Origin: Gracilinanus agilis
Taxonomy: Eukaryota
Assembly: GCF_016433145.1 (NCBI RefSeq)
Contig: NC_058135.1
Location: forward strand, 264,850,776-264,911,870
Reading direction: 5' to 3'
Length of the DNA stretch: 61,095 bases
In this document: one piece after another, positions 12,557-48,055 of the stretch
Layout of the letters: every line of letters begins with the position of its first letter
How positions within the stretch are numbered: position 1 is the first letter of the stretch
Translations under genes and position numbers: made by a program
The notes under the pieces: model-generated
What the model was told of the DNA's origin: nothing
What the model saw: the letters and a program-made list of their open reading frames with translations, nothing else
Databases searched by the model: none

Positions 12557-12749
12557 CAGTGACTCACAAAATGGGTGCCACCGCCCCCTGGTGGGTGCTG
12601 CAGCAATCCGGAGGGGGGTGATGGCCACAGGTGCATTTATCTTTCCTATGAATTGCTATTAAAATTTTAAAAAAATTAATTTCCAGGGGGCTAAGTAATA
12701 TTTTTTTCTGGAAAGGGGGCGGTAGGTCAAAAAAGTTTAGGAACCACTG
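12557..12749 (-). mobile_element. Non-autonomous hAT/Charlie-type MITE, copy 1 (193 bp)
   Basis: Degenerate TIRs CAGTGACTCACAAA / reverse CAGTGGTTCCTAAA. Roughly 90% identical by eye to the reverse complement of 47859-48055. No clean TSD is visible (left GAGTCTTC, right GCTAAGAC). Confidence 0.85.
12581..12594 (-). promoter_or_regulatory. CTCF core motif within the MITE
   Basis: CCGCCCCCTGGTGG on +, which reads CCACCAGGGGGCGG on -. This matches the established CTCF core CCACCAGGGGGCG. Binding is not shown. Confidence 0.6.
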
Positions 12750-15589
12750 GCTAAGACCAGTGTGGAAGAGTTTATACCAGATATAACCAACAAGATAAAT
12801 CTGTTCAATGACTAATGAGTAAACAGCATCAAGCCAGAGAAAATGTATCTAGCATTAGGTGGCAAGAGGTGCTCATCTAAAGGGTTCTCAAGTGCTCTGG
12901 GGGATACCTGTGCAGAGGCCACATAACATAGGAGATACTTAATTTTCTTTGAAGCTATTCAACCATTATTATTAGATAATATTACACTGTAGTAATTGAG
13001 TTTTGGATTATGATAAGCCATTCATAATGAGGTACGTGTCATTAAAATAGATTATCCTGGATATATTTGCTTAAAAAGAGAATCAACAAATAATGGAAAC
13101 ATTGTGAAAAATATTAAGCAGATAGATTAGATAGAAAGATGATAGACAAGGAGATACCTACATACATACCTTGATGAAAGACAGAATAATTAAGATTTGT
13201 TTAAGACTTTCTATGTGGTCAGACACTGTAATACGAACTTGGAACATAAATATAAAAAAGTAAAACAAAAAAGGAACTTACTTTCTAATGGAAGTAATAA
13301 CAAATAATGGGGAGCCTGGGGGAGTAGAGAAAGATGGGGAAAGGCTTGAAAGGTGATGGGTTGGGGCTGAAACAGTTTCATGGAGAGCTGGGCTGAGCAA
13401 ATGGTATTCTATCAGAGTCAAGGACCCAGGAGACTATGAACTACAAATATATGTGTTTGTGGGTGTGTACACATATACATATACAGACACATATACTACA
13501 TTAGCACATATAAACATGTATATATATGTATTACATGAATACAAACTGTGAAATTATATATGTAATGAGTATATGTATTATAGGAATAGAATTATATGTA
13601 CACATAATTAGATTCCAAACAAATTAATTTCCTTTGTAATCTTATGTATATTATTTTAAGCACTTAAAAACATTATTCTCAAAATAGTGCTATTTGATCT
13701 TAATATTCTCTAGTCTAGAGTTAGTTATCTTTCCACTGTATCCTCATCAAAAAAAAATCTATCACAAATGTGGAAGAAGTATCATTAACGCCAGCATCCT
13801 CTGTCCTAACCCAGGAGTAAATTGAGGCTCACAATAATGAATTTTTAAAAATATTAAATGGCACAGAATCGAGCATGAATGTCTGGGACACTCAGCATGT
13901 GGAGTTTTATACCATAGTTCACATTCCTAACTTCTCTTTTCTCCACATCCTGGCCATCTCATTTGGGAATGCAAGGATCAAATAATTGTTTGCCAGTGTA
14001 CACTTCCCCTTCTGTGATTTGTTGTAAATACTCCCCTAAGACACTGGTCATGAGATTCTTCTATAAATCAAATATATAAATATAATCCTATTTCATAGAG
14101 AGCTATTGGGAGGCCCAGTGAAGAGGAAATTGCATTAAAAAATGTAGCTTCCCCACATGGGGCAGAATGTATCACAAATGCCTCATTTATTGCTGGGAGG
14201 GCTGGTACAGACTGTACACCCGCCAGGTCATTTTTACTACTACATTCATTTTCCTCTGTGCTTACTGAAATGAAAAATCTCCATACCTGAGGAAAAAAAA
14301 ATAACAGCGTTGCATCTCTTCCCTCTCTCCCTGGTGACAACTCCTGCTTGGAAGAGCCAACTTGCTCTATTCCAGTATATGAGCTATGCTGACAAAGCCT
14401 GGAGAATAACACTGACTGAAGAGAATGGTGAATTACCTTTGCTTTGGGAAAATGCAAAACACCAAACACCCATAGCATGGCTAGCAGCTTCAATTCCCAG
14501 CCAAAATTTGCCTGGAATACTGCAGGAACCACAAACATTCTTTTCAACACCTGCACACCCAGCACATCATCACCATGGCCACATACCAGGGAGCGCCATT
14601 TTGGATGTTTTCCTGAGACTCCCTGTGTTCTGAAAGTGTACCCCACTCAGCTGAAATGTTCAACAGCAAAATAGTTAATTATTCCTCTGCCCCCCAGACC
14701 TAGGAAACCAGCCTATGCATCCATATACATGCATAAATAAGATGTGTACATTATATGCAGAATACATGTCAACACATGGATAGTAAAGATATATGTATGC
14801 ATACATGTGTGTGGTATGTTTGTATAAAATACACACATGGGTATACCCCTATGCTTACACACATCTCCTCTCTCTCTGAGTCTCTCTCATTTTCACTACC
14901 TATCTCCAACCCCCATTGAATGTGGCCCAAAAGCCTGATTTCAAGAGCTCTGAGAATAGCAGCATCAACCAGACCATTAAATTGACTAGTAGATGCTATG
15001 CAGCCACATTTAAATGAAGAAAATCTTGTGGAAAAGAAATCCACCATTTTCAATACCATTAACTACTGACCTAGTGCCACCAACATGCAAGTTAAGTCCA
15101 AGTGCGAGAACCCTGGAGAAAACAGCATCCCCTACCTGAAATCAACAACCCTTCCTCCAAACTAGTAATGGCAACCATCATACAGAAGAGAAATCCATGT
15201 AGAAATGGGACCTGGCATTCTCTACAGTGGGTGTCATAGCTCCGGTCCCATCCACAGCCTCAGTTATGGAAGACATGGAAAATAAAGTTCTCTTCATTCA
15301 AGTCTTTGACACAGTCAAATATTTCCAAATAAGAAGCAGATATACTTTTCTCTGTTAATACAAAGGGTATTAATAAAAGTGCATCATCATCTTCCTTAAT
15401 GTGAAAAAGGATAGGATTACAAGCCTTTTCGATCTGACTTATAACTGAAGCTTCCAATGTGTATTGGCTCTTCCATGAGAAAAAGAACAGAATATAAAGG
15501 ACTGTGTCTATTTTTCTACTTCTTACTATTTAACATAATGTTTGGCACACAATAAGCCCTTAATTGATATTTCTTTTATTTTGCCTTGC

Positions 15590-16020
15590 TTCCTTGCTTC
15601 CTCCTTTCCTTCCTTCCTCCCTACCTTATTTCTTCCTTCCTTCCTTCCTTCCTTCCTTCCTTCCTTCCTCCCTTTCTTCTTCCCTACCTTCTTTCCTTCC
15701 TACCTCCTTCCCTCCCTCGCTTCCTTTTTTCCTTCCTTTCTTCCTCCTTTCCTTCCTTCCGCTACCTTATTTCTTCCTTCATTCCTCCCTTCCTTCATCC
15801 TTATCTTCTTCCCTACCNNNNNNNNNNNNNNNNNNNNNNNNNNNNNNNNNNNNNNNNNNNNNNNNNNNNNNNNNNNNNNNNNNNNNNNNNNNNNNNNNNN
15901 NNNNNNNNNNNNNNNNNNNNNNNNNNNNNNNNNNNNNNNNNNNNNNNNNNNNNNNCTTCTTTCCTTCCTACCACCTTCCTTTCTTCCTTTTTTCTTCTTC
16001 CTTCCTTCCTTTTTTCTTTC
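15590..16020. repeat. (TTCC)n-derived polypyrimidine microsatellite, with N-gap 15818-15955
   Basis: Direct reading of imperfect TTCC arrays flanking an N run. Confidence 0.95.
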
Positions 16021-16204
16021 CAAAATCATATATATATATAAAGATATAAATACTCACAAAAATATATATGCATACATACATGCATATTGGAAATAAAATG
16101 TTGATTTCATTGATAAAAGAAATTCCCAATGATAAAATTATTGCTCTAAGAACTGTATTATCTTGGTTATCTTGCCTATCTGACATTCAGATTCTTCATG
16201 AATA

Positions 16205-16400
16205 TAAAGAAGAAGGAAGGAAGAAGGAAAAGAGGGAAGAAAGGAAGGAAGCAAGGAAAGAAGGAAGGAAGGAAGAGGGGAAGAAAGGATGGAAAGAGGG
16301 AAGGTAGGAGGGAAAGAGGGAAGGAAGGAAGAAAGGAAGAGCTATAGGGTGGGAGGGAGGTAGTAAGAGAGGTATGGAAGGAGGGAAGGAAGAAGGAAAA
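16205..16400. repeat. (GGAA)n-derived polypurine microsatellite
   Basis: Direct reading of imperfect GAAG/GGAA arrays. Confidence 0.95.
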
Positions 16401-16974
16401 TTTTATGATACCCCTACTACATGATTGCCAGAATTGTGCTAAGGGCCTTAGAAATATTATCAGCCTCAGCTTCTATAAATAACAGACATAGTTTCAAAAT
16501 AAAAGTCAGGGTTTATGCTCTTGTGATCAAAGAAGTGCTAGATGTCCAGGCAATTTGGTCCTTTCATAGGTTAAAATTTATTGATGGAAGACACCCTGAC
16601 CATCACCTAGAAAACAAAAATTGCTAATATGACTATCTGACTATACCTGATTTCCGTAATGTTAGCAATATATATACAATATATCTGATATTTCTCTAAT
16701 GAAGCATTTCTAACAGCAAAATTTACTCTGAATTTGAGGGAGAAGGCTATATAATGAATATCAACATCTCCCTTCATACAAGATGATTAGCTCTCTCCTT
16801 TGGCATGCAGTAGAATTAGCATCAAGTGAGACAAATTCTCACAGATAAAACTAAAATGCAGGGATAGGAAGACTTGATATTCCCACCAAGAAGTGGGCCT
16901 ATATAGGCCTATATATCTTCATCCTGAGAAAAATCGTCACTTCTCTTATACTAGTTCCTGTCTCACTTATTATT

Positions 16975-19900
16975 TAAATTACTATTCTTTATTAATAGAA
17001 TGTATTCATAAGTCTTTCAATTCTTCCCTCTCTTCCCTGCATCACAGAAGGCATCATTTGGGAGACAGACAATGTATATGTAAATTATATATTTTAATTT
17101 TCCATTTCTCAATTCACTCTCTGTAGGTAATAATTCCTAAGTTCTTCTTCAAGTATTAAATCTATAGATATGTATAATGTTGTCTTAGTTCTATTCCCTT
17201 TACTGTTTATTATCGCATGTAGTTCTTTCTAATTTTTTTCTTTTTTATTAGCCTGCTCATCATTTCTAATAATGCAGAAGAATGCCATTATAATTATATA
17301 CAATTTGTTTAGCTATTCCTAATTGAGGCATCCCTTCAATTATAAGTTCTTTGTAAACACAAAGAGAGCTGCTACAAATATTTTGGAAAACATAGGTTCT
17401 TTTCTTTTCCCACTGTTTTGGGAAATAGATATCTAAGACTATATACAGTTTTATAGTTTTCTGCGTATAGTTCCAAATCATTCTCCAAAAATGGTTGGAT
17501 CAGTGATCAGCTCTACCAACAATGTATTGGTATGCCCATTTTTGCACATCTACTCCAACATTTGTTATTTTGTCCTTTTATCCTTTTAACCTATCTGATG
17601 CGTGTGTATGAGATGATATGTCAGAATGTTGTTTTAATTTCTTTAATGAATTGTGACTTGGAACATTTTTTCATATGCCTATTATGGCTTTAATTTCTTC
17701 ATCTGAAAATTATTCATATCATTTATCCATTTTTCAATTGAGGGATGGCAGTGACTCTTATGAATTTGACAATGTTCTCAATGCATTTTAGATATGAGAC
17801 CTCTCTCTGAGAGGTTATTTTTAACACCCCCCCCCATTTTTTTGCTTCCTTCTTGGCAACATTTGTTTTATTTGTATAAAAAATTTTCAATTTAATGTAT
17901 TTAAAATTATCCATTTTACATCTCATAATGTTCTATATCTCTTGGTGACTCATGCATTTTTCTCCTATTCAAAAATCTGATAGACAATCCCTGTTCTAAA
18001 TTACTTTTAATATCTCCTTTTATGTTTAGATCATGTATCCATTTTGATCTTATGATAAGTGAATGGTGTCAGATACTGTTCTAGACCTAGTTTTTGCCAA
18101 AATGCTTTCCAATTGTCCAAAGAATTTTTCCCCCAAATAGTGATCTCTTCCTGCCCAAACCTATATCAATGTTTTTGTCTGAAAAAGGTTACTACAATCT
18201 TTTTACTACTGTTTGTTGTATGTCTGTTTTCTTTCAATGATCTTTCTTTCTCTTTCTTCGCCCATACCAGACAGTATAAATAATTACTATTTCATATTGC
18301 AATTTAAAATATACTATTACACCTCCTTCCTTTACATTTTTCATTGATTCTTTTGATAATCTTGATCTTTTGTTCTTCCAAAGCATACTTTTAAAGTTTT
18401 CTAGCTCAATAAAATATTTTTTTGGTAATTTAATTGGGATGGCATTGAATAAGTTGATTACTTTATGAAGGACTGTCATTTTGGCGCTTCCCATCCATAT
18501 AATTAAAATATAGATATGACTTTATTTACATAAAGTTTTATATTTATGTTCATATAGCTTCTGGGTTTGTTTTAGCATTATATTCCCAAGTATTTTATTC
18601 TGTGGTTATTTTAAATGGAGTATCTCTTTTTTATTTCTTCTCACAGGATGTTGTTAGTAATATATGAAAATGCTGATGATTTTTGTGGGTTTTTTTATGT
18701 CATCCTCCATCTTTGCTAAAATTATTGTTAGTTTCAACTAACTTTTTAAGTTGTATCTCTAGGACTTTCCACATATACCATCACTTCATTCACAAAAAAT
18801 AGATAGTTGTATTACCTACCCCTTTGTTCATTCTAATTTCTTCAGTTTCAGTTTCTTTTAATATTGCTATTGCTGGCATTTCTAATACATGGTTAAAAAA
18901 TATTGGTGATAATGGTCATCCTTGTTTCACTCCTGATCTTAATTGGCAAGGTATCTAGCATATCTATTGTAAATAATACTTGCTAATGGTTTTAGGTATA
19001 TTCTTCATATCATTTTAAGAAAAAAATCCTCTTATACCTATGCTTTCCAGTGTTTTTAATAGGAATGAATGTTGTATTTTTTCAAAGGCTTTTTCAGTAT
19101 CTATTGATATGATCACATGGCTTTTATTACTTTTGTTATTAACATAATCAATTATGTTGATATTTTCCTTATATTAAACCATCCCTTCATTTTGGTATAA
19201 ATATTGTTTGGTCATGATGTATAAACTTTGGATTATATATATATATATATACATATATATATTTATTTGAATAAATATATGTTGCCTAATAATTACTTTA
19301 TTTTCATCTTCATTAGTGGCATATTCATCCTTTTCACCTTTAGTGCTAGAGATTTGGTTTTGTTCCCTCATTTTAAAAAAATCATATTATTGAGTAGTTT
19401 ATCAGTTTTGCTTATTTTAAAAAAAACAATTCCTAGATTTATTAATTCAATGACTTTCTTATTTTCAGCTTTATTGATCTCACCTTTAATTTTTAGGATT
19501 TCTAATTTGATGTTTAGTTGGGGATTTATAATTTGTTCTTTTTCTATTTTTTTGAATTACACTCCCAATTCACTGATCTTTTCTTTCTCTATTTTAACAT
19601 AAGTATGCAGAGATATAAATTTCCCCCTATTTTACTGCTTCTGCTATATCCATAGGTTTTGGTATGTTGTCTCATTATCATCATCATCACTTTCTTTAAT
19701 AAAAAATGTTTAATTGTTTCTATGATTTGTTCTTTAAATGACTTAATCTTTAAAAGATTAAATTATTTATTCTCCAATTAGTTTTTACTTTTGTTTCCAT
19801 GGTCCCCAATTATTTACAATAAAAAATGTCTCACAGCCTAAAAAAGGATGCATTTACTATCTCTGCTCTTCTATTTAAGTTTATTATTTTTGTACCCTAA

Positions 19901-20100
19901 CACATGATCAATTTTTTGGTAAAGGTGTGATGTACCACTGAGAAGAAGGTAATAATATACCTTTCTTTTCCCATATAATTTTCCCCAGATAGCTATCAGA
20001 TTTCACTTCTCTGAGATTCTATTCCTCTCCTAGACTTCCTTCTATTTTTTGGTTAAATTTATCTAATTCTGAGAGGAGAAAATTGATAACTCCCTCCATT
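16975..20100 (-). mobile_element. Old L1 LINE, 3' ~3 kb (ORF2 remnant plus 3'UTR), decayed and internally deleted
   Basis: Track ORF 18234-18494(-) reads 'INLFNAIPIKLPKKYFIELE..WKNKRSRLSK..GG..TVWY', which is recognisable L1 ORF2 C-terminal sequence. The T-rich + strand fits antisense L1. Confidence 0.92.
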
Positions 20101-20214
20101 ATGAGGATAATATTCATTATTTTAGTTAAAACTTCTTGCATTTAAAGGGACTGTATATCTACTTCACACATTTTAATGCCAATTTTAAATAAAAAATAAT
20201 GTTAAATCCTTTTT

Positions 20215-20470
20215 AAGTAGTAAGCTAGGGGACCCATTGGATACAGTGCTGAGCTAGGAATTAGGCAAACCTGGTATTGAAGGCTGTCTCAGACACTAGC
20301 TGGATAACCCTGGGTAAGTCATTTAACGTTTCCAAAATCTTGTTTTCCTCATCTGTAAAATGGGGATAAAAAGAACATTTATTTCTTAAAATTTTTAAAG
20401 GACTAAATGAGATAATATATGTAAAGTGCTTGGCAAAACTTAAAGTGCAATATGAATTCTAGTTGCTCAT
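20215..20470 (+). mobile_element. MIR-family SINE
   Basis: 'ggataaccctgggtaagtcattt..ttttcctcatctgtaaaatggggataa...gagataatatatgtaaagtgctt' is a near full-length MIR. Confidence 0.75.
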
Positions 20471-21222
20471 TAAAAATTTAGCTTCTCTCTGTACTGTAAA
20501 AATATATCTTTTCCTCTCTAATCTATCTTCACCTTTTATGAGAAACAGTACACTTTACATGAATTAGTCATGAATAATATTTTCTAGGGAAAAAAAGAAA
20601 GAAAAAGTGAACCAGGTTCTAACTATTGATTGAGCCCTTGACTTTGAACCAGAAATCATTTCAATTTGAACAATGTTTTCTTAAGCAACTGTATATTATA
20701 TGCCAAGTACTATGCTAGATGTAGGCACTTATAAAGACAAAAATTGGCCAATTCCTGGCCTCAAGGAGCTTTTATTCCATCATATGACATAATATATATA
20801 CAAGTAGGTAGCTATTCAGTATAAAATACTGAAAAGTAAATTAAAGTTGAGGGGAGCTTTCCTACTGGGGAGAATCAGGACAAAGACTTGTGCAGGAAAT
20901 GATATCCAAGTTTTACTAAAAAACTGACATCCTGAATTCAAATCTTGGCTCAATACTTATTGTTTATATAACTAAAGCCAAGCCATTTTATGTTCTAAGC
21001 CTGCTTTGTAAAACATGAATACTAATACTTTTTTCTTCACAGAATATCGAGGAGGAAACATTTTAATAAGGTATAATGTAATAATTATACTTATATCTGA
21101 ATACAGTAAATATTGTACATTTTTATTATTTTTCCAAAAAGTATCAATAAATGAAATCTTTAGAATGTAAGCCCTTTTAGGCTTACTTTTGTTTCTGAAG
21201 AACCTAGTATAGTACATTGCAT

Positions 21223-21415
21223 NNNNNNNNNNNNNNNNNNNNNNNNNNNNNNNNNNNNNNNNNNNNNNNNNNNNNNNNNNNNNNNNNNNNNNNNNNNNNN
21301 NNNNNNNNNNNNNNNNNNNNNNNNNNNNNNNNNNNNNNNNNNNNNNNNNNNNNNNNNNNNNNNNNNNNNNNNNNNNNNNNNNNNNNNNNNNNNNNNNNNN
21401 NNNNNNNNNNNNNNN
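21223..21415. other. Assembly gap (N run)
   Basis: N characters. Other gaps are at 15818-15955, 36125-36260, 41613-41693, 51062-51163 and 54754-54983. Confidence 1.
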
Positions 21416-22209
21416 TTGGAAGGGACTTTAGTTATCATTTAGTCTCTCCTTTTCAATTAACATACTAGGGAACCAAAGTCCAGAGTGGTTAGGTGACTTG
21501 CCCTGGAGTCATTAAGTAGGAGACCAATCTGGGATTTGAACTCTGGAATTCTGACTCCAAATCCAATGATTTTACCATTTTACCACAAAACTAAGCTTGC
21601 ATTATAGTTTTAATGCATTGAATCAGTGCATTATCAATGACCCTAAAAATATCCTTTCTTTTCCCTCTGGCTCAGTTTCCCTAAATGCAAATGAGGGGCT
21701 TGGACTAGATCTCCAAGGACAGTTAATCAATCAAGAAACATTTATTAAACAATTTCTGTGTGGTACACCTCATGGGAAACTCTAGGAATACTTGCAGGGG
21801 AGTGATGGGGTTACTTGCCCTCACAGGCTTACAACTCAGTGGAGTAGACAACATACAAAAAATACAAGATACATATAGTGAAAACATCAAGGAGTCTCAG
21901 AGAGAAAAATACTGGTGAAGGGGTTATACCTCGAAAGGTTATTTTTTTTTAATTTTTTTGAAAGGTTATTTTTAAAATTCTGACATCCACTGATTCTTCT
22001 TATATCCATTACCCAAAAAGAAAATATAAATGTTATACCACTTTTTCAAATGGACCCTTTAAGAGCATGTCACATTGGTTGAAAAATATATTTCCAGAGT
22101 CTCAGAGGGCCGCTTTTTCCCTCCTCTTTCTTTTTTAATGACCCACTATTTCCTAAACTTCTCTCTTCACAAGAGGCATACCACCTGCTTCTAATCATTT
22201 CCCTTCCAG

Positions 22210-22343
22210 CCTGAACCTGGATATTTTTAATGTCAATTCAGAATAGTACATAAGTCACTTAGTTAATAAGCATTCTCAACAGTGCTTTAGAAATGGAAAG
22301 AAATGCTCTCGTTACCCTTCTGCTATGTAGCACGGTCCCTGAA
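22210..22343 (+). ncRNA. Candidate exon of an unannotated spliced transcript
   Basis: Branch-like CTAATC, then pyrimidine tract ATTTCCCTTCCAG|, then donor GAA|GTATGT. All three frames are closed from the exon start, but a strong-Kozak ATG lies at 22293. Confidence 0.25.
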
Positions 22344-35520: not shown

Positions 35521-36918
35521 CTCATTTATATAAAATTTCAGAATTTTTGAGATCACTGAAATGGGCCCCTCATTCAAAATATTTAATATTTGCAAGTTAA
35601 GATGCCATATGTCTTACTGATTTTGCTAGGCTCAAGGTTACATGCATCTATCTCTATAGGAGTATAGAACACCAGTTCTTCTTACAGATATCCCTAGGGC
35701 ACATGAGGCTGAGGGACTTGGCACAGGCTTCTCTGTATTAGAGACAAGATTTAGATCTCCATTCTCCTCATGCCAAAGATGACTAGATCTATGCCCTGTG
35801 CCAGGCTCCTTCTATTTCCTCCACAGAATGTTAAGATGACTCTGTTTGTAGACTGCATACCATCTACTTCATTGTGTTCTTTTTCTACTCCTCCTGAGAA
35901 AACATTTATATTCAGTTTTTTTACTTGTTTCTTCACAATGCAATGATCAAAAATGGCTTTAATTTCTATGTGTGAAAGGCAAAGGCATAGAAACAGAGGC
36001 AGAGATAGAAAATTAGAGACAGGAAGACAGATACAGGAATAGGGTGAAACAGAAATGAAAACAGAAAAAAGAGTGAGAAACATAAGAAAGAGAAGGAAGG
36101 AGGGAGGGGAAAGATGGGAGGCAGNNNNNNNNNNNNNNNNNNNNNNNNNNNNNNNNNNNNNNNNNNNNNNNNNNNNNNNNNNNNNNNNNNNNNNNNNNNN
36201 NNNNNNNNNNNNNNNNNNNNNNNNNNNNNNNNNNNNNNNNNNNNNNNNNNNNNNNNNNNNGGGAGGTACAGAGACTTTCCATATTACTTCCTGAGCTATC
36301 ACATTCCACTCAGAAAATTATAATTGATAAGAAGATATACTTGCTATCAAAACTAAATTTGTTTCTTTGCAATTTGTGTTCCTAGTTTTGCCCTCTGAGA
36401 CCAAACTGCAAGTTCAATCACACTCCCACATGAGGGTCCTTCACATCTTTTAAATCAGTTTATGACATGTAAGTCTTCCCTCTTTGAGACATTAAAATCA
36501 GCATTTATAGATTAGAAAACTGAGGCCAAAAATTCAATAATTCTCCTATAAGTCACAAAGCTAGTGACAGAGAAACTATTCAAAACCAAGATTTCCAAAT
36601 TCCAAACTCTAACCATTATATAATATTGTCTTTCTTAATACATTATGTATATATTTAGAGATGACTATGTTTTCTCTCCCATTTGAATACAAGCTCCTTT
36701 AAGAGCTAGGGCTGTTTCATTGCTTTTGTATCCCTAGTATCTAGAACCAAGCTTGGCACACAGGGAGTGGCACAGAGGCTAAACAAATAATTTATTTGAA
36801 CTAAATAACTCCCACATGTCAAAATTTTCTCTCCTAATGCAGGTCAGTATATTCTCTTCAACATTCAGTCTTATAAAGTTGACTAGAGGGCACTGAGATG
36901 TTCAATGACTTTTCCAAG

Positions 36919-37455
36919 TGTCAACTAGGTTTTTACAAGTTTCCAGTTTGCCCCTGCTCACAGAGAACTCACTCCAAAGGAAGTCCCAGACTTACCTGTT
37001 TCCAAATGAACAATAGACTTTGAAGTGTTTGGTGCCCCCAATTTGTGTGGGACTAGTGGACAGAGTCAAATTTTAAGTAGCCTTTTTTGTCTTAGTAGCT
37101 TCTCCCATTGTATTAAAGTCCTCTCCCAGGAAGTCCAGTTCTTAGTTTGACACTTCCTTTTGTATTTATTTTAAGACTTTTCCCTGATACCCCAGCTGCA
37201 GGCTGCAACCTCTTTCCCAATCCTGTCAATGTATGTTTGCTATACCAAGTTCCCCAAAAGATATAAAAGATTCCTAAGTGCTATTATTCTTTGGAGAATC
37301 ATCTTGAGTGGTGATCCTTCCAGAGACATTGTCTCCAGAGCCCCAGGGTTTGGACTCTATGTAGCCTGGGGCAGATTTGGACCTATCTCTTTCCTGATTA
37401 AAGACTTGGTTTTTGCGAACTACTTTAGTAGTTCTGTGTTATTTCCAGGTTAACA
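36919..37455 (+). mobile_element. Solo LTR (537 bp) with 4-bp TSD CAAG
   Basis: TGTCAAC...GTTAACA inverted termini, TATA-like GATATAAAAG at ~37260, ATTAAA at ~37397. CAAG at 36915-36918 and 37456-37459. Confidence 0.8.
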
Positions 37456-37499
37456 CAAGGTCTTATGGTCAATATTTTGCCTGGCACATAGCACATACA

Positions 37500-37845
37500 T
37501 AGTTTGTCCTGTGTCAACTTGTGTGTGAATTGGATTTAAATGTCAGAGCTACACAAAACCAAAAGCCTCACTTGTCCAGAGGTGATACAAATATGAGGAT
37601 GCCAGGAGATGGCTCAGAATACAATGGATGACATTGGTGTCTCTGATACTTAATCAGATTCTAATTGTTCCATAGTGCCCACTTCAGCCCCTTTCATGGC
37701 TGTTGGAACAAATTGTTCTCATCTATCCATTCTGCCCTGGGAAAGTCTTCATATGCTTGGGGCAGACACTCCCTTAAGTTACTAGTATTGATTATCTTCA
37801 ACTTGGTTTAGATTACCTACTGAGAAGGTTTTTCCTGGGTGTGGA
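37500..37845 (-). mobile_element. RTE-related element (RTE LINE end / WALLSI-type)
   Basis: 'tttgtcct..gtgaattggatttaa..gagatggc..catggctgttggaacaaattgttctcatc..ggaaagtcttca.atgcttgggg' matches marsupial RTE-related consensus as recalled. Confidence 0.65.
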
Positions 37846-37945
37846 CATTGTACATATTGATACACAGTAGGTGTTTAATAAATGTTTATTGATTGACTAA
37901 CAGTTGATGAAAACTAATAGGTGAGATTCAAGACAGGATAAGAAC

Positions 37946-38631
37946 TGTGAAGATGGGATTAACTCTCCCCTGCCCTCTTTTAGGTGTAATCATGCCACAT
38001 TTCCTTAAGTGAGGGGAGGTCAGTAACCCATATGCTAAAGTGAATGACAACTCAGAAAAGACTGACTGCCCACCACAGTCTTAAAATTCTAAAATTGTGA
38101 CTGGTCCCTGTAAAGTGGAAGGAAGGCACAGGAAGTGACATAAAGAAGGGTCTTTAAAAGTAGTTGCAACTTCCTGTGACCAGCCCTTTCTCCTTCAAAC
38201 TTGGCCTTAGAGGATCTCCAGCTTGGAACCTTGGACTGTTTCTGGTAAGACTGCTCTTGAATTTTCCCTTTGGACTATCACATGGGTGAGTGGGAAAAGC
38301 TCACTTTCCTTTCCTGACTTCCAGAGAGATTTGCACCAACTAGCCCACCCCCCCTCTTTCTCCGAGGCCATGTGGGTGGTACCTAATCTATCTCTGGGCC
38401 CTCAGGCTAGGCTTCTGGAGCTCTGCTGGAGCAAAGCCAGGTGCAGGAGCAGATATCTAACTCTTTAAGTTAGATTTCTTTCTCTACCCTCTTCCTCATT
38501 TCTCTCCTTTCACTTTCCCCCTCTATTTTATAAATAAATACTGCTAAAAAGTCATCTGACTTGAGATATATTAATTTTGGTGACCATAATCTCATATATT
38601 TAGTCCAAACTTAATTTTTTTAACCATTACA
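37946..38631 (+). mobile_element. Solo LTR (686 bp) with 4-bp TSD GAAC (ERV1-like)
   Basis: TGTGAAG...ATTACA termini, TATA-like 'tttaaaag' at ~38153, AATAAA at ~38533. GAAC at 37942-37945 and 38632-38635. Confidence 0.85.
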
Positions 38632-38652
38632 GAACTTATTCTATATCCCTAC

Positions 38653-39644
38653 TGTAATGGGGTAATTTGAGGAAAGGTGTATGATACAAGGGAATTTTGA
38701 AAGGAGGTTATCAGGGATTTATTAAGATAGTAAATCTAGGCTACAGGTAGGCTGGAATAAGGAGATTCAGGATATACTAGGGCTGAAGTCAGGAGTTATA
38801 ACACAGAAGGGAAACAGAGATCTTCAGGGAGAGGAGAAATTAAACTAAACAGACAAACAGCAGGCTTTACAGACTGGGACTTAGACTCAAACACAGGCTG
38901 AGGGAAATAGACTAAACTGAAATTAACAAACAGGGTTTAGTTAATTTCACAGGAAGGGACTTGTTTTGAACTTACACCTTCCTTCAAGATGGATACCTCA
39001 GCTTCCCTTTAAGCCCAGAGTATGTTGGTTCTTTCCCTCTTCTTCCCTCTCTTAAATAACGAACAGACAAATTATACTAATAGGTCTGTTGAAACACAAA
39101 AGGGTTTATTATCTTTAAAGGATGATTTGTCAGGAAAGTGGATTGAGGAAAGCCCTAACAGTTGTTTCAGGAACTTCAGGTGGGGGAAGGGAGGCAGAGA
39201 TGGAGTCTGAGTAAGGACCTGCCATTAACTCAAGCTCACAAAGTGCTCTTGATATCTAATGGGGATAAATGATGACTGACTAGTTTCTTTATATTTAATA
39301 TTGTCAATATAATTAATCCTTCACAGATTTGAACTCCTCTCTAATTACTCTCCTTATTAACTCCACGGACATATAAGGTAAGGGAGGGAAGGTAGGAAAT
39401 AATATTGGGAAGGAAGATATAAAGGGTTTATCCAAAATAAAAATTTCTTAAATAAATATTTCAAAGCTAGGCTAAATTTCAATACTACAGATAGGTAAGG
39501 AAGCAGCTTGGCTGGTCAGACAACCTCCCTCCACGGGAGACCCAAACCAACTTTCTTTTTCCCTCATGATTCCAAACCCCTACCTGCTTTTAGAACTCAG
39601 CCAAAGCTTGAAAATACTATATGACCCCCTCTCTCTATACTACA
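38653..39644 (-). mobile_element. Antisense LTR sequence (one long or two abutting solo LTRs)
   Basis: Left end TGTAATGG is the reverse of the CCATTACA end of the previous LTR. Antisense polyA signal at ~38717. Candidate 5' termini at 39325 (reverse TGTGAAGGATTAAT) and 39644 (reverse TGTAGTAT). No TSD match. Confidence 0.55.
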
Positions 39645-39789
39645 TAGACTGATGATAGTAGTAGGAAACCACATGAGGAGAATTTTGAGATACTGGAAAA
39701 AGCAATGTTTTTGGAATCAGAAAACTTAGATGAGAATCCCAGCCTCAACACTTACTATCTACATGACTATCACTGGAAAAAATATTAAT

Positions 39790-39966
39790 GGGGGTATCTC
39801 CGTGGCTCAGTGGATTGAGAGTCAGGTCCTGAGCTCAAAATCTGACCTCAGCTACTTCCTAGGAAAGTCACTTAACACCTATTGCCTCACTCTTATTTCT
39901 CTTTTGCCTTGAAACTAATACACAGCATTGATTCTAAAATGGAAAAAGGGATTAAAATATATTTTT
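39790..39966 (+). mobile_element. Opossum SINE (SINE2-type)
   Basis: 'gtggctcagtggattgagagtcagg..ctgacctcag.tacttcctagg..aagtcacttaac..gcattgattctaaaatggaa'. Confidence 0.8.
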
Positions 39967-41559
39967 TAAGCATGGGAATACAAATAAACTTTTTAAAGCC
40001 CCCTCCCTAAGGGACCTTGCAATACAATGAGAGAAGCAAAATGTGTATATATGAATACATGATAGAATATATAACGATAACAAACATAATACATAGACAA
40101 AGGAGAGATGAAATTTGGAACAGTAGAAGTGTAGCACAGGACTTCATCTGAGACTTGAAGAAAACCAAGAATTCTGAGAGGTAGAGGTGAGGAATAATGG
40201 CATCGGAAGACTGGAGCATATGAACACAAATGCAAACAGATGGGAAATGAGGCATTGCATGTATTGGGCAGTGATTAGACAACTACAGCTATAACTCAGA
40301 ATGGGAAAAAGGAAGGGTGAAAAGATCAGAAAGACTAGAAGGGGTCAAGTTATGAAAGATTTTAAATTGTAAATAGAGGTTATATTTGATCCAATTAACA
40401 AGAGGGGCCTAGTGAAGATTGTTAAGTAGGGGAATGACATGATCAGGTCAGTGCTTTAGGAAAAATATTTTGATAACTGAGTGGAGACTAGACTGGAGGA
40501 GGAAGAAGCTTCAGTGAGAAGAGATGGAGCAGTAAACCATCATCATAGTGCAGGAAAGAAGAAATGAGTGACTGGATATGGGTAATGACTATGTAAATGG
40601 AGGCATGTGAGAGATGTTATGGTAAAATTAACAAGAAGAAAATAACTTTATCTAGAAGTTCTCTCATCTTTAAGATGTACTAGATGTCTGCTAAGATCTT
40701 CTTTCAGTTCTAAGTTCATAATCCTCCTGCATCTCCCCCCCATCTCCTCTTCACCCCAAGCTGGCAGGGAACATCATCCAGCATGGTCTTCCCATGAAGG
40801 TGAGTCTTCCTGGGATTCACTCCAAGGAAACTTATCATTAGAAAAGCCACAAACTGGTGGTAATAATTTTACACACAGAATAGAACCACAGCCTGGATTT
40901 TCAGGAAAGCATTACTGTGAAGGGCAAGGGGAGGTTTCTAGTGCTCTCATCAAAGAGTCTATAATGCCAAATGCAATTGCCCACCTTCTATCTCGGAGTC
41001 AGCCACAGAGCTGGCCATTGTCCAGCCTGGAGGGCTGCCCGATCTCTCTGTCAAACCACAGGGAGCCATCTCTCATTGCTATGTAAACTTACCCTCCCTT
41101 CTCTGAAACAGAGGAGCTCCCTCACTTACAGCAAGTGCTCCAAAGCCTCTTGGCTATAAAAGCAAAGAAAATGCACTTTAAAATAATCAAGTGCCAACCA
41201 GTTCAGTGTGTAATCATCTTAAAGTGCATAAAAGCTAAAGCATATGTAAGGATCTATGGATAGCTTTGACCTGGTCCTTCATTTACACCTTCTGTACCTC
41301 CTCCCTTACTTCCCTCACCCTCAGAGAATAGCAAAGTAATTCAGTCAGTGTTTTCCTTCCCTCTCCTAACAAAGGAGGAATCAGGTCCCAGCTAGAGGGT
41401 CATGCTGAAGTCCTCTTAGTCCTTGACACAACTCAAATGGATGCCAACGAGACAGGGATACAGTACAGGATTTTTTAGAATGGAAGAGCCCGTTGGATCT
41501 TTTTTTCTAGAAAGAGAAAGAATAAGTTAATGCATATTTCCAAAACTGAATCTCATCCT

Positions 41560-41562
<3 letters not shown>

Positions 41563-41612
<50 letters not shown>

Positions 41613-41693
41613 NNNNNNNNNNNNNNNNNNNNNNNNNNNNNNNNNNNNNNNNNNNNNNNNNNNNNNNNNNNNNNNNNNNNNNNNNNNNNNNNN

Positions 41694-41756
<63 letters not shown>
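41563..41756. repeat. (CT)n microsatellite spanning N-gap 41613-41693
   Basis: Direct reading. Confidence 0.97.
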
Positions 41757-41759
<3 letters not shown>

Positions 41760-44155
41760 TCTTCCATAGCATAGCATCCTCTCCAAGCCTCATGTATATG
41801 TAGAATCTAGGAGGGCAAGAGCAGGGGCTGGATGCTAGGTGTCAGGGAGAGTATTCTATTTGTAAGGCATGACCTCACAGCTGCCTGTGCAAACAGGAAC
41901 AGATTTACACGCAGAAAAAGACACAGTTCCTTTTTTCTGTTCCCTGGTAGACCTTGCCACTCTGTAAATGGTAAATCATTTCTTCCTATTCAGCCACATT
42001 GCTGCTTCTCAATTGCTTTACAAAATCAATGCAATTTCTATATGTGTCTCTGTACGTAGGTATGTGTAGACAGGCATATTTGTTGGAGTTGAGGCTAGCC
42101 AGATACAGTTTTTCTTCCTCCTTAATAGTTGATGTGAGCTAATCCAGTCTAAGAACACTCTCCCACCACCACCCCCAGACAACTGAGTTGCCATTAATAA
42201 GACCAATGAGAGCAACATTTGACATTTATACAGCCTGAAGGATTCTGAAAGGTTTCACCAATTACTGAACAGAGAGTCCCCAAGAGCCACAGCTCCTGGC
42301 ATCCCACAGCCCACAGCAGTCTGGAGAGAGATTTTGCCCAAGGGCATGTAGCAGATGCCCACTCTTTTAAGGCATGCACACAATGCCCATCTATTACTCA
42401 TTCCCAAATGGATGGGTCAGGGTTTCAGTTTTTAAAACTGTATTAAAACGCCCCCACTGCCACCCCCCACCCCCACATAGAAACTCATATGCTAGTCAGT
42501 CTTCCTTGGAAGCCTGAAAGGAATCCTGATTGTCCAAATTGGATTTCCAGCTAGGGCTGAACACTCTTAAGAAGGTTAATCATCACCTGGTAGGCTCTGA
42601 GACAAATTGAAAGCCTTTGGATCCTCTCTACAGCAAGCCCAATCTGTGTACAGTGGTTTGATGTGACTAAATTTCCAGATATAAGCAACGAGAATCCAAA
42701 AATCTATCACCCTATGATTTATCCATATCATAAGGGAGCTGACCCTGAAAAGTATTTAAACGGGGAGGATTTCAAATGGCCTACAACATTCACATATGGA
42801 CAGAAAATCAATAAGTGCTTCAAGAAATCATATAAACCTGTTGGTTCATAAAGAATGAAGCATGAATTTGGTTTGGTGGGTTGCGCATAGTCTACTTTAT
42901 CACAAGCAACCCAGGCATCATTTTCTTAGGGGAAAAAAAATTGAGGAATGACAGGAATAAGGCAAAAAGAAAAATAAGAACAAAAACTTTTGGTTTCTCT
43001 GAATCATTTGATTAGCCAGAGACATTTTGCTACACAGACAAGCTGGTTCCATTGATTGGATCAAGACTGTTTTACTTAAATGCAAATGTAAATTAAACCA
43101 GAATCCCTACCCCTCACTCACCACCATCATAAAAGAATTCACTTACCTAGAGACCAAGGCATCCCAGTTCCTCCCCACTTGTGTGAATTTAGCTTTTACA
43201 GGAGGCAATTTGCCTTTTTCAGGCTGACAACGTTTAGGAAGGTTGAATGCTTAACCTAATTTTTTGTTGATTCAATTCAGGACTAATGAATGCCGCTCCC
43301 CCTCCCCACCCCCCTCTTCTGACTTGGGTTACTAAATAGTGGACCCTCCTGATTTGCATTCTCCATTGAAGCCCAAGGCAGTCTGGCTGCCAAGGGGGTA
43401 TCATGTGCAGAGTTCTCAGACAGGTGCTATAGTTCATTATCATAAACATCTGTGGAGACCCAAACCAGGTTCCTGTAGCTACTAAATAGGCATGAGAAGA
43501 GAAAGGTTCTTCCTGAACCTCCAGCCAGGCACTGTGACAAAAAGTATTTGCAATCATCTTTGCAGATATGCATACATTGACTCCTGAAGGTTAACTGAAA
43601 CTTAACAGGCATTTTGCATAATTCCGTTATAAATATGGATCTACATGCAAATTTGAAAGGAGCCTCTCTGGGAGGATTCCCATGTCCCAGGATGCTCTCA
43701 GATGATGGGCAACACCATCTATCCTGGAAACAAAATCAAAACAAAGGAAAACTCATTTATTGCCCAAACTATGGAGGACAGTGGGAGCGTTCCATTGTTA
43801 ATCAAATATACTCATTAATATCTCTCTAGAAAGGACAATATGTTCGAGATGGGTGGGCAAACTGGCTAACATATGTCACTTCCTGGATCAAATAATATAT
43901 TTGTAGAGCTCAGTGGAAACCATAAAGAACTATATAAATGTTAGCTTTTATTATCATCATCATTATTGTAATGATCTTCATCACCAATATTAATTCAATT
44001 AATTCAGCTAGCTATGGGGATTAGACAACTGCTCCCATCCTCATTAACTGCTTTGCCCCTGCCCTCAAGGGAGCTACTGGGTCTTTGGAAGAAAAAAATC
44101 AATTGACTCCATAGTGGTGGGTGATGGGAAATGACTGTCTATGGTCTTCAGTACA

Positions 44156-44625
44156 CAGTGATCTCTCACCTATGGTAGGAGTTAGGCTCCAGAGACCCCA
44201 GCAATCAGTGAAAATTTGAGAAATAGCAGCATTATAATTATTTTATTATTTATATATATTTTAAAGCTTTATATACCCTTCCTACTCTCCTATAAACCTT
44301 TTGCACACTTTTATTAAACTTTCCCACACTCTTATGAACACTTCATACACTCTTAAACACTTTCTACACTCAAACCTATATAATTTTATCAACATATAAA
44401 ATTCTATTATATTTTACATAAGAGTGTATTATTATATACTAAATTATATACTATTATATAATTATATACCAATATAACAGTACTCACCAGTGAAGTACTA
44501 TATCACAACTTGAATGAAAATCCTGTGATATAATGAAAACTCTATGATACAGAAGTAGATTTTTTTAAAACCCACAATACAGTGAAGTCGCAATAAGTGA
44601 ACCACAATATAGCGAGGCACAACTG
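44156..44625. mobile_element. Tigger/pogo-type (Tc1-mariner) non-autonomous DNA transposon
   Basis: Degenerate TIRs CAGTGATCTCTCACCTAT / reverse CAGTTGTGCCTCGCTATAT, TA after the right end, MER2-like subterminal sequence and an AT-rich interior. Confidence 0.65.
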
Positions 44626-46254
44626 TACTGCCAAAGTCATAAGTCAATCAGACCAAATCCCTTCTCAATTATACATGAAGAAACTAAGATGGAGAGTGAC
44701 ATGCCCAGTGTGCCATAGCTATTAAATGTCCAAGGTGGAATGTGAAATCACTTCCTCCTGATTCCAAATTTGGTCCTCTACCTCATCCTCTGAGAATTGA
44801 TCAAATGAGCCCTGAGAGGAAAACCACAAGGTATAGTCCTCTTTTTGTCATTGGTTATCCTAGTTTTATCATTGTATGGCTTTGAGGAAGTACATGGACC
44901 GCCATTGACCTTAATTTCTTCTTGTGTAAAAAATGACACAGCTGGACTACATAATCAGAGCTGGAAAGGGACTTAGAAAATACATGTATAATTTTGAGGA
45001 AGTCACTCGGTAGCAGAGTTTTCTAATTAGCTAATTGAGGAAATGGGATCTATCAAATGAAGTCTACGGAAAATATATGCATACATACATGTATGTGTAT
45101 ACAATTTTGCATATATACTTACACATTTGTATGTGTGCATATGTTCATATGTGTGTTTATATATAGGTATGTGCATATATAGTATATATAAGAAAGGATG
45201 TTAAATTTGATTACAGGACTAATTTTTTAGAAATAGAAATGCCTTTAGATGTAATCAAGTTAAAAGTTCTAATGTTTAAAAAATATGTTGAATCCCAAAG
45301 AAATTGGCTTCTTTTGATAGATCCCATTTTCTTAATTCATTAATGAGAAAACTGTGCTACTATGTGACTTCCTCAAAATTACAGTTAATTAGTAGCAGAA
45401 TAGGAACTTGAATGCAGATCTTAGAATTCAGTCCCATGTGCTTTTTCACAAATTTGCTACATCACAAATTTTAAAAATAACTTGTCAGGATTTTATATAC
45501 ATAATGTATATGTGTGTAACATGTATGTATGTGTGTATGTATGATTTAGAATTTAGACATAACCAACCCTTTTACTTTAAAGATGCCAATAGAAATTAAG
45601 TGATTTGCACAAAATCACACATATGTGGCAGAATCCTTTTCAAATTCAGTTCCTGTGATTTCAAGTTAAAACTCTCTGACAATCAGCAAAATTCATCCAC
45701 TTTTGACATGCTAGTTATGTTGTATTTGATACATTTCCTGAATTTCTCCAGCCCTGTTCTGATTACCAAAGACATTAACATAAAAACAAAATCTTGGTTG
45801 GAATTCATCTGTTTTTGCTGTTCAATCTACTACCTGAAGTCTTGGTTTTGTCACATCATAATTAGTTTCTATGGAAATGATTATGTCATCAGAAGCCAGA
45901 AATCTGAATTCTGTTTTCATGCAAATATCTTTTCAATAGGAATGAAAGGAAGAGAAATACAATAAACAGAAATATTTAGTCACCACATCTGTGATTGGTA
46001 TGGGGAGGAGAGGAATTTAAAAAGAATGAATGTTCTTGAAAATGCTTTTCTATCAAACTAAGACATGTCAGTCTTTAAGCAGTGTGAATATTTACTGACA
46101 AAACCTTCAACTCTTGGCATTCTCCTTTACTCTCTCATGTCCAGCAGAACTGGAGAGAAGACGTTGAATTATCTTTGGACATTGGCAAATGAGGCAAAAA
46201 ATTGCTTATGGATATTGGGGTTGTTTTTAGTGAAATCACTGAATCCATGATTAA

Positions 46255-47427
46255 TGTGTTCACGCAAATATCATCTATGTCCTGGGACATAGATAAAAGT
46301 TGGTTCTTGTATGTGGGCGAGTATGGATGGTAGATAGGTGGGTATCTACACTCCCCCCTTGTTAGCTTTCAATGGTCCCAATCAGCTATTCACTCACCCC
46401 CATCCCAGGTAAGGGAATAAACTCAAAAAGGTTCCCAAATGGCAAAGCTATAGTGGGGATACTGAAGGAAGGTATTGGGGTTCAGTTGTGACCCTAATGG
46501 ATGGGATCCCACCTTCAGAGCCAGCACTATGAAGAATAGCCTTCCCACATGGTGTTTGATATTCTTCTTCCCCTCAGCCACAAGATTAGTCTTCCTCCCC
46601 TCCAAGTAAAAGCCCAAACTACCACTAATGAACTAAGAAAGATTTATTATAAGGATGAAGGAATTCAGGATAAGAGGGTGAGGGATGTTTGAGGATTTAT
46701 GAGGAATTAGGGTGCAGGGATAACTTATCTATCAACTATGAACCCCCACAACAAGAGAGCAGTTCTGGTTTCTTCTATAGCTTGGACTCAGAAACTGACT
46801 CTCCTTCCCCTCACAATATCCTATCCTTAATACTATCTAACAAACAGAGGGATAACTGCAAGGAAGGGGCAGAAGAGGGATCAAGGAAGGGTCTCCCAAG
46901 TGCCCTCTCCCTCCAGAGTCCGGGCACTACGGCCAATTATGGAGCACAAGTCTTTCGGTTTATTCTTCGTTGGCAATGAAGTCAGAAGAAAGGTTTTGCT
47001 GTTGAAATCTCCAGATTGCCCCTGAATTTTGGGTTCAGAAGAGCTAAATTCTTGTCCAGAACCTCCCAATCACCATCCACCCCCAGCCCACCAGAAACTT
47101 GAATGTCCTTTCAGCAATCTTTGTCAATTGGCTGTTGGCAGTTTAGAATCTTCAGAATTTTCCCCAAACTCACTCCTTCACTGTCCCCTCCCAAAAGGAA
47201 GTCTCTCAGAGTTCCATGGGGTCTGTATCCAGTCCCTTCCAAGATGAGTGCTTAGTGATCCTTGATTTACCCCAATTCCACACTTACAGATTCCCCCATT
47301 TTTGTCTTGTGGATCGATCGTCCTCCGGAGGATCCACGTATTTTTAATCTAATTTACTTATCTATTCCCTTTCTATTCTTAATTCCTCTTCCCCACCCCC
47401 CAGAAAAATTAAAAAAAAAATCCTACA
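46255..47427. mobile_element. Probable ERV/LTR-derived segment
   Basis: TGT...ACA termini, raised GC and CpG relative to flanks, LTR-like purine/pyrimidine blocks. Flanks TTAA/TTTA are only a near match. Confidence 0.4.
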
Positions 47428-47858
47428 TTTATCTTATCCTATATTAATGCTATTCTTTCTACACTTTGCTAAGGTGGGCTAAGAAAAGTTGGGAAAGGAA
47501 AGGGAGAGGGATACAAGGTTCCAATGCACATTTCTTACACGTGAAACAATTTTGTATCAATGGACTTTTCCTAATGAATACAAAAGTTCTGTTAGAGAAA
47601 GCTTTGATTAAGGAATTTCTGGGTTTCTTTGGAATATTGAGAAAGGAATACTAAAAGTTCTAAAAGCAAACACTTCAGTGACTGGATGAGATGGAATGGG
47701 GAGGAAGAGCTAGTCCCACCTCTGTGGGACTCCTTAAATTTTATGTGATCATAAGGAAATCTTTTCACCCCCATGGAACTCATTTTCCTTATGTATAACA
47801 TGAGTATATTGTACTACATGATGCCCAAGGACCTTTTTTCAGTGGATATAGTCTATAT

Positions 47859-48055
47859 CAGTGGTTCCCAAACTTTTTCGGCCTATTGCCCCCTTTCCAG
47901 AAAAAAAATATTACTTAGCCCCCAGGAAATTAATATATTTTTTAATTTTAATAGCAATTAATAGGAAAGATAAATGCAACTGTGGCCATCACCACCCCCC
48001 CTGGATTGCTGCAGCACCCACCAGGGGGCGTTGGCACCCACTTTGGGAATCACTG
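47859..48055 (+). mobile_element. Non-autonomous hAT/Charlie-type MITE, copy 2 (197 bp), perfect 8-bp TSD
   Basis: TIRs CAGTGGTTCCCAAA / reverse CAGTGATTCCCAAA (13/14). TSD GTCTATAT at 47851-47858 and 48056-48063, resembling the Charlie NTCTAGAN target. Confidence 0.92.
48018..48031 (+). promoter_or_regulatory. CTCF core motif within the MITE
   Basis: CCACCAGGGGGCGT on +. Binding is not shown. Confidence 0.6.

What the first reader, a model, noticed from the sequence alone, without database searches (positions are those of the whole stretch)
12557..48055. A hAT MITE family carrying a CTCF site: two copies bracket 35 kb in divergent orientation
Seen: two ~195-bp elements with CAGTGGTTCCCAAA-type TIRs at 12557-12749 (-) and 47859-48055 (+, perfect TSD GTCTATAT). 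Both contain CCACCAGGGGGCG. The 28-nt stretch GGATTGCTGCAGCACCCACCAGGGGGCG, including a CpG, is the longest identical run between copies that otherwise differ by about 10% by eye. Established: this 13-mer matches the CTCF core. TE-driven spreading of CTCF sites is described mainly for SINEs (rodent B2; MAR-type SINEs reported in opossum). Motif orientation governs cohesin loop anchoring. Inference: a DNA-transposon MITE may have seeded insulator sites across didelphid genomes. The left motif points left and the right motif points right (divergent), so they would anchor loops outward rather than to each other, around the enhancer-like islands at 14-44 kb.
Basis: partly seen in the sequence, partly recalled or inferred. 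Interest (0 to 1): 0.7.

Follow-up and report, generated by a model that had tools for sequence, protein, structure and literature searches.

The report
Dead hAT transposon copies carrying CTCF motif
Two relics of a small cut-and-paste (hAT) transposon, each about 195 bases long, carry a textbook binding motif for the genome-folding protein CTCF. The motif is part of the transposon's own end structure, shows no sign of special conservation here, and could not be tested for binding, so this is an ordinary case of a known way such motifs spread.

Summary
Two copies of one non-autonomous hAT-type element lie at 12557-12749 (-) and 47859-48055 (+). They are 89% identical, and similarity stops exactly at their terminal inverted repeats. 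The right copy has a perfect 8-bp target-site duplication. Each copy holds CCACCAGGGGGCG, which equals positions 4-16 of the canonical CTCF 19-mer. These are the only such sites in the 61 kb, and they point away from each other.

- The "longest identical run" argument fails. With 21 differences in 197 columns, a run of 28 or more arises in 60% of shuffles.
- The G-run of the motif is one of three copies of a short subterminal repeat (GCCCCC/GGGGGC). It is the inverted partner of a 5' subterminal 10-mer, so it reads as hAT end architecture and need not be an evolved insulator.
- A divergent arrangement is one of four equally likely layouts.
- hAT-derived elements (MER20, MER91B, the hAT-Charlie group) are already documented CTCF and loop-anchor sources in placental mammals.
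- CTCF occupancy could not be tested: no ChIP run was listed.

This scan has noted the same family many times elsewhere in this genome.

The parts
12557..12749 (-). Left copy of the non-autonomous hAT-type element (193 bp)
   Evidence: 89.3% identical to the right copy, and similarity ends at the TIRs.
12736..12749 (-). Left copy, 5' terminal inverted repeat (CAGTGGTTCCTAAA)
12557..12570 (-). Left copy, 3' terminal inverted repeat (degraded; ends in CACTG)
12582..12594 (-). CTCF-core-like 13-mer of the left copy. It contains the inverted G5C subterminal repeat (12583-12588).
12714..12723 (-). Left copy, 5' subterminal 10-mer ACCGCCCCCT. Its inverted partner lies inside and just 3' of the CTCF-like core.
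   Evidence: P about 0.001 against shuffles.
12686..12691 (-). Left copy, second direct GCCCCC repeat
12750..12757 (-). Left copy, upstream candidate target-site duplication GTCTTAGC
12544..12551 (-). Left copy, downstream candidate target-site duplication CTCTTAGC (7 of 8), separated from the element end by GAAGA
47859..48055 (+). Right copy of the element (197 bp)
47859..47872 (+). Right copy, 5' TIR CAGTGGTTCCCAAA
48042..48055 (+). Right copy, 3' TIR TTTGGGAATCACTG (13 of 14 complementary to the 5' TIR)
48018..48030 (+). CTCF-core-like 13-mer of the right copy. It contains the inverted G5C repeat (48024-48029).
47888..47894 (+). Right copy, 5' subterminal GCCCCCT, the inverted partner of the AGGGGGC inside the CTCF-like core
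   Evidence: P about 0.04.
47918..47923 (+). Right copy, second direct GCCCCC repeat
47851..47858 (+). Right copy, target-site duplication GTCTATAT (upstream)
48056..48063 (+). Right copy, target-site duplication GTCTATAT (downstream)

Best explanation
These are two independent, long-dead insertions of one non-autonomous hAT-superfamily transposon (a MITE). A hAT transposase supplied in trans moved them by cut-and-paste and left 8-bp target-site duplications. Each end carries a 14-nt terminal inverted repeat, followed by short subterminal repeats of the type GCCCCC[T/A]. There are two in direct orientation in the 5' part and one inverted in the 3' part. The inverted 3' repeat, together with the bases upstream of it, spells CCACCAGGGGGCG, a full match to the CTCF core. 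The motif is therefore an inherited piece of the element's end architecture; that these repeats are transposase-docking repeats is inferred. Every insertion of the family delivers a potential CTCF site in the orientation of the element. Shown here: the element anatomy, the identity of the motif, its place in the repeat architecture, and the absence of any detectable extra conservation between the two copies. Inferred: that the repeats bind a transposase; that the copies inserted roughly 15 million years ago; and that some copies of the family may be occupied by CTCF opportunistically, as happens with hAT-derived MER20 and MER91B in placental mammals. The divergent pair spanning about 35 kb is most simply two chance insertions.
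For: There are two copies at 89.3% identity, and similarity ends at the TIRs. The right copy has a perfect 8-bp TSD. The TIRs begin with CAGTG. GCCCCC/GGGGGC occurs three times in each copy, and none of 20000 shuffles reaches that count. ACCGCCCCCT lies 27-36 nt from the 5' end and, inverted, 24-33 nt from the 3' end of the left copy (P about 0.001). The shorter GCCCCCT plays the same role in the right copy (P about 0.04). The 13-mer equals positions 4-16 of the canonical 19-mer. There is no excess conservation: a longest run of 28 has P = 0.60, and fully identical motif columns have P = 0.22. The K2P distance is 0.094. At the marsupial rate of 3.21e-9 quoted in PMC3621081 this gives about 15 million years. 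hAT-Charlie, MER20 and MER91B are known CTCF and loop-anchor sources.
Against: Only two copies could be examined, so family-wide constraint on the motif cannot be excluded. The motif CpG is kept in both copies, while each of the other three CpG sites is lost in one copy; this is suggestive but rests on one site. These are the only near-consensus CTCF cores in 61 kb of AT-rich DNA, so if CTCF binds anywhere in this window it is probably here. Transposase binding to the G5C repeats is inferred by analogy with other hAT elements, and no autonomous partner was identified.
Confidence: 0.75

Rival explanations
1. Exapted insulators. One or both copies are occupied by CTCF in vivo and stall cohesin. 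Being divergent, they would anchor loops outward, to the left of 12.6 kb and to the right of 48.0 kb, and leave the 35 kb between them as an inter-domain stretch.
For: The 13-mer matches the canonical core exactly. They are the only such sites in the window. The CTCF motif is conserved between opossum and placental mammals, and repeat-borne sites are bound in opossum liver (PMC3368268). hAT-derived sites do anchor loops in human cells.
Against: There are no occupancy data: no ChIP run was listed. The two copies show no excess conservation. The layout is one of four equally likely. Schmidt et al. found that the opossum-specific over-represented bound motif words lie mostly in SINEs (MAR1_Mdo) and number in the hundreds. 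That argues weakly against massive binding of a MITE family, although a canonical word could escape their species-specific test (my inference).
Confidence: 0.15
2. Transposon strategy. The family evolved or kept a CTCF site because recruiting CTCF shields its copies, or the donor site, from silencing. On this reading the motif is a selected feature of the element and does not merely fall out of its repeats.
For: Schmidt et al. raise this idea for repeat-borne CTCF sites in general (PMC3368268 discussion). The match covers all 13 core bases, which is more than the 6-7 nt shared with the other two repeats of the element.
Against: The G-run and the bases flanking it are mirrored at the 5' end at the same distance from the terminus, and end architecture alone explains that. 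No data on active copies or on the autonomous partner are available.
Confidence: 0.08
3. Not a transposon. The two stretches are a segmental duplication or a chance similarity.
For: None beyond the bare fact that there are only two copies in the window.
Against: Similarity starts and stops at inverted termini. The right copy has a perfect 8-bp TSD, expected by chance about once in 65000. The blastn E-value is 1e-69. Earlier notes of this scan report the same element in many other windows of this genome (unchecked).
Confidence: 0.01

Closest known systems
MER20 / MER20B and the wider hAT-Charlie group, and MER91B (hAT-Tip100), in placental mammals
   Same: [quoted passage not shown] MER20 and MER91B are enriched at loop anchors and TAD borders (PMC9902604). 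Both recur among deeply conserved CTCF-binding events (Table S3 of PMC3368268).
   Different: Those families are ancient, eutherian-wide, and have demonstrated binding. The element here is younger (about 9% pairwise K2P), sits in a marsupial genome and has no binding data.
MAR1_Mdo SINE (opossum) and B2 SINE (rodents) as CTCF-site dispersers
   Same: A lineage-specific repeat family carries the M1 core motif to many loci (PMC3368268).
   Different: Those are retrotransposed SINEs and have ChIP-seq evidence. This is a cut-and-paste DNA element with TIRs and an 8-bp TSD, and binding is untested.
OC1 (OposCharlie1) non-autonomous elements, horizontally transferred hAT MITEs of marsupials (192-bp OC1_Das-NA)
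   Same: Similar size (192 bp against 193-197 bp), the same superfamily, a similar age range, and a C5 run near one end.
   Different: The OC1_Das-NA consensus starts with CAGGGGTCCTCAAAC and has a different interior (supplement 1 of PMC3621081). None of five short strings taken from the element here occurs in that paper's files. This is not the same family.

Membership tests
hAT superfamily, non-autonomous element (MITE) | 8-bp target-site duplication | tested here: met
   The right copy has a perfect GTCTATAT on both sides, and it fits the nTnnnnAn target preference known for hAT elements (my knowledge). The left copy matches 7 of 8 and is displaced by 5 nt.
hAT superfamily, non-autonomous element (MITE) | Short terminal inverted repeats beginning with CAG.G | tested here: met
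   CAGTGGTTCCCAAA pairs with the inverse of TTTGGGAATCACTG at 13 of 14 positions in the right copy.
hAT superfamily, non-autonomous element (MITE) | Small size, no room for a transposase, and dispersed copies whose similarity ends at the TIRs | tested here: met
   The copies are 193 and 197 bp with an AT-rich interior. Similarity between them ends at the termini.
hAT superfamily, non-autonomous element (MITE) | Short subterminal repeats in both ends (transposase-docking sites in studied hAT elements) | tested here: met
   GCCCCC occurs twice in direct orientation and once inverted in each copy, and 0 of 20000 shuffles reach that count. The inverted 10-mer ACCGCCCCCT lies at matching distances from both ends. 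Binding by a transposase was not tested.
hAT superfamily, non-autonomous element (MITE) | An autonomous partner encoding a hAT transposase with matching ends; a named Dfam or Repbase family | not testable with these tools
   There is no repeat library or marsupial genome among the tools. Scans of the metagenome, prokaryote-genome and viral collections gave only chance hits or none.
OC1 (OposCharlie1) non-autonomous family | Termini and interior matching the OC1 consensus | tested here: not met
   The OC1_Das-NA consensus read has different TIRs and a different interior. String look-ups in its files found nothing.
CTCF binding site | Match to the core motif | tested here: met
   13 of 13 bases match positions 4-16 of the canonical 19-mer. 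The 13-mer also fits CCASYAGRKGGCR (this consensus is from my memory).
CTCF binding site | Occupancy by CTCF and cohesin in vivo | not testable with these tools
CTCF binding site | Slower change in the motif than in the surrounding element | tested here: inconclusive
   With two copies only, the longest identical run has P = 0.60 and the identical motif columns have P = 0.22. There is no signal, but also little power.
Insulator / loop anchor | Insulation or loop anchoring at the site, with orientation-dependent partners | not testable with these tools
   No Hi-C data are available. The orientation is divergent, so by the convergent rule the two sites would not pair with each other.

The most novel reading that the evidence does not exclude
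This didelphid hAT MITE family could be a second, DNA-transposon wave of CTCF-site dispersal in opossum, alongside the MAR1_Mdo SINE. A substantial share of its copies would be bound by CTCF and cohesin. Earlier motif-word analysis would have missed it because the family carries the canonical word and not a species-specific one. If the family also proves to be one of the horizontally transferred hAT groups of South American mammals, foreign DNA would have imported ready-made architectural sites.
Probability: 0.12. Interest if true: 0.55.

Novelty: new member of a known kind. Interest (0 to 1): 0.25.

Why it matters
If many copies were bound, opossum would offer an independent marsupial example of a cut-and-paste transposon seeding CTCF sites, to set beside MER20 and MER91B in placentals and B2 and MAR1 among SINEs. 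It would also show that a transposon's own end repeats can double as architectural-protein sites. As it stands, the locus adds two motif instances with no evidence of function. The kind of event is well documented, and the same family has been flagged repeatedly elsewhere in this genome by this scan.

Tried and rejected
1. ChIP test. The look-up of sequencing runs on 12150-13150 with the library word ChIP listed none. The single search was then spent, so read laying could not be used. No run was listed, which does not mean that none exists.

2. Relatives in public collections.
- A TIR-gap-motif pattern in metagenome contigs gave one hit, L001. It is GC-rich and unrelated apart from the typed bases.
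- A TIR-gap-TIR pattern gave nothing in the prokaryote-genome or viral collections.
- The 22-mer around the motif hit two bacterial MAG contigs, L002 and L003, which are chance matches in GC-rich sequence that looks coding.
- Two more viral scans gave nothing.

3. Family name.
- A literature search for the TIR string found nothing.
- Gentles et al. 2007 is not held.
- OC1 was rejected by reading its consensus.
- The Rhodnius paper holds no sequences for SPIN, hAT1 or ET.

4. Rfam found no family in the window.

5. No paper among those searchable links an opossum hAT element to CTCF.

6. A position-weight-matrix score was not computed.
Full report
**Observation**

Reading both places and aligning them shows two copies of one short element: 12557-12749 on the minus strand (193 bp) and 47859-48055 on the plus strand (197 bp).
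- A sensitive blastn of the right copy against the whole window finds only itself and the left copy, at 89.3% identity over 197 columns and E = 1.6e-69. Everything else is noise of 26 bases or fewer.
- With 600 bases of flank on each side, similarity still begins at the first base of the 5' TIR and ends within one base of the 3' TIR. These are discrete mobile-element copies and not a duplicated segment.
- The right copy is flanked by a perfect 8-bp direct repeat, GTCTATAT.
- The left copy has GTCTTAGC upstream. Downstream it has CTCTTAGC (7 of 8), but only after five extra bases, GAAGA. Its target-site duplication is therefore recognisable but disturbed.
- The 13-mer CCACCAGGGGGCG lies at 12582-12594 (-) and 48018-48030 (+). 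Shuffles give none at up to one mismatch.
- At up to two mismatches, or with the degenerate core CCASYAGRKGGCR at up to one mismatch, these remain the only two sites in 61 kb. The window is AT-rich, about 35% G+C, with no G+C-rich island at 2-kb resolution.

**Assembly gaps**

The four runs of N named by the scan's program lie between the copies, and neither element touches one.
- The copies belong to different contigs of the scaffold. The 35-kb distance is therefore an estimate, and the relative orientation depends on the scaffolding.
- The gaps at 15818-15955 and 41613-41693 sit inside CT-rich microsatellites that continue on the same strand on both sides. This is what a read-through failure in a simple repeat looks like, and it fits continuity.
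- The gap at 36125-36260 has GA-rich simple sequence on its left.
- The gap at 21223-21415 offers no test.
- I filled no N and looked up no letters for them.

**What the elements are**

Four features are the marks of a non-autonomous hAT-superfamily element:
- fourteen-base terminal inverted repeats beginning with CAGTG;
- an 8-bp target-site duplication;
- a length near 195 bp with an AT-rich interior;
- homology limited to the stretch between the termini.

The point that matters for the finding lies just inside the termini.
- In the left copy, ACCGCCCCCT lies 27-36 bases from the 5' end. Its exact inverse lies 24-33 bases from the 3' end (local alignment against shuffles, P about 0.001).
- In the right copy the shared core has shrunk to GCCCCCT (P about 0.04).
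- A third GCCCCC lies about 60 bases in, in direct orientation. Each copy thus has three of these hexamers, two direct and one inverted, and none of 20000 composition-matched shuffles reaches that count.
- The inverted 3' hexamer is the GGGGGC inside the CTCF-like core.

The core is therefore built from the element's own subterminal repeat plus the five bases upstream of it. In studied hAT elements such repeats are transposase-docking sites. That is established knowledge about the superfamily; for this family it is my inference.

**The CTCF reading**

The 13-mer equals positions 4-16 of the canonical motif TGGCCACCAGGGGGCGCTA, as quoted in PMC10589630 and in bioRxiv 10.1101/024620. As a motif match the claim is correct. 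The orientation claim is also correct: the left motif is on the minus strand and the right one on the plus strand. By the convergent rule they would not pair with each other.

The argument for constraint does not hold.
- The 28-nt identical run is the longest. But when the 21 differing columns are placed at random among 197, the longest run is 28 or more in 60% of trials, with a mean of 30.8.
- A given block of 13 columns is free of differences in 22% of trials.
- Of four CpG positions, three are lost in one copy each and the motif CpG survives in both. With roughly half of the CpG instances lost, that has a chance of about one in four.
- Two copies cannot show more than this.

**Age**

The Kimura distance is 0.094 (9 transitions and 8 transversions over 193 sites). 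Halved and divided by the marsupial neutral rate used by Gilbert et al. (3.21e-9 per site per year, PMC3621081), it gives roughly 15 million years. This is a rough figure that assumes a shared master sequence.

**What is already known**
- Schmidt et al. (PMC3368268) performed CTCF and STAG1 ChIP-seq in opossum liver. They found opossum-specific over-represented bound motif words mostly in the SINE MAR1_Mdo, numbering in the hundreds.
- The same paper's Table S3 lists MER20, MER20B, MER91B, MER91C, MER102b, MER117 and MER119 again and again at deeply conserved CTCF-binding events.
[quoted passage not shown] They also show a MER20 insertion taking over a conserved loop anchor in mouse (PMC6979391).
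- A later study again finds MER20 and MER91B enriched at loop anchors and TAD borders (PMC9902604).
- A deep-learning screen singles out hAT-Charlie and hAT-Tip100 elements for genome folding (PMC10589630).

A hAT MITE that spreads CTCF sites is therefore a known kind. What would be new is a marsupial, lineage-specific family doing so. I found no paper reporting that.

**What could not be done**
- The decisive test is occupancy. My one search for sequencing runs, restricted to ChIP libraries, listed none, which also closed the way to laying reads.
- No repeat library or marsupial genome is among the tools. The family could not be named, counted or aligned beyond these two copies.
- Pattern scans of the metagenome, prokaryote-genome and viral collections returned only chance hits in GC-rich bacterial sequence, or nothing.
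- The 192-bp OC1 MITE of marsupials looked like a candidate by size. Its published consensus has different termini and a different interior.
- Whether the family belongs to one of the other horizontally transferred hAT groups shared by opossum and the bug Rhodnius (PMC11614815) remains open.

**Earlier notes of this scan**

After I had formed the subterminal-repeat idea, the scan's index showed that the same family has been flagged many times in this genome: 33 notes hold the search words. Follow-up agents reached similar verdicts.
- They judged the motif to be part of the end structure, and binding to be untested.
- One note on another divergent pair made the same one-in-four point.
- One note says close relatives exist in arthropod DNA. 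I could not reproduce that.

These notes are leads, and my conclusions rest on the calls cited above.

**Verdict**

I found no support for the suggestion of conservation or for any meaning in the 35-kb bracket. Function is untested. The most likely account is two neutral insertions of a dead transposon whose end repeat happens to spell a CTCF core. Opportunistic binding of some family copies is plausible but unproven.

Noticed in passing
window 15584-16339: A (CCTT)n array at 15584-15796 and a (GAAG)n array at 16212-16339 flank the assembly gap at 15818-15955. The two arrays are reverse complements of each other, so they form an inverted pair of polypurine/polypyrimidine microsatellites. The stretch 14001-16000 has a GC skew of -0.30.
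   Followed up: partly
window 41565-41756: A perfect (CT)n runs into both sides of the gap at 41613-41693, so the gap is most simply an unread continuation of one dinucleotide repeat.
   Followed up: partly
window 47840-47845 and 12758-12762: A second CAGTGG hexamer lies 5 bases upstream of the right copy's target-site duplication. CACTG, the element's last five bases, lies immediately upstream of the left copy's duplication. This may be chance, a target preference or an old footprint.
   Followed up: no
window 12552-12556: Five extra bases (GAAGA) separate the left copy's 3' terminus from its 7-of-8 target-site duplication. This could be a small insertion after integration or imprecise end processing.
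   Followed up: no
window 21416-21505: The sequence just right of the gap at 21223-21415 contains GGTTAGGTGACTTGCCC, which resembles the core of MIR-type SINEs (from memory, not tested).
   Followed up: no
L001 413-580; L002 6594-6615; L003 3772-3793: The only collection hits to the typed patterns are chance matches in GC-rich bacterial-type contigs. They share nothing with the element beyond the typed bases.
   Followed up: yes
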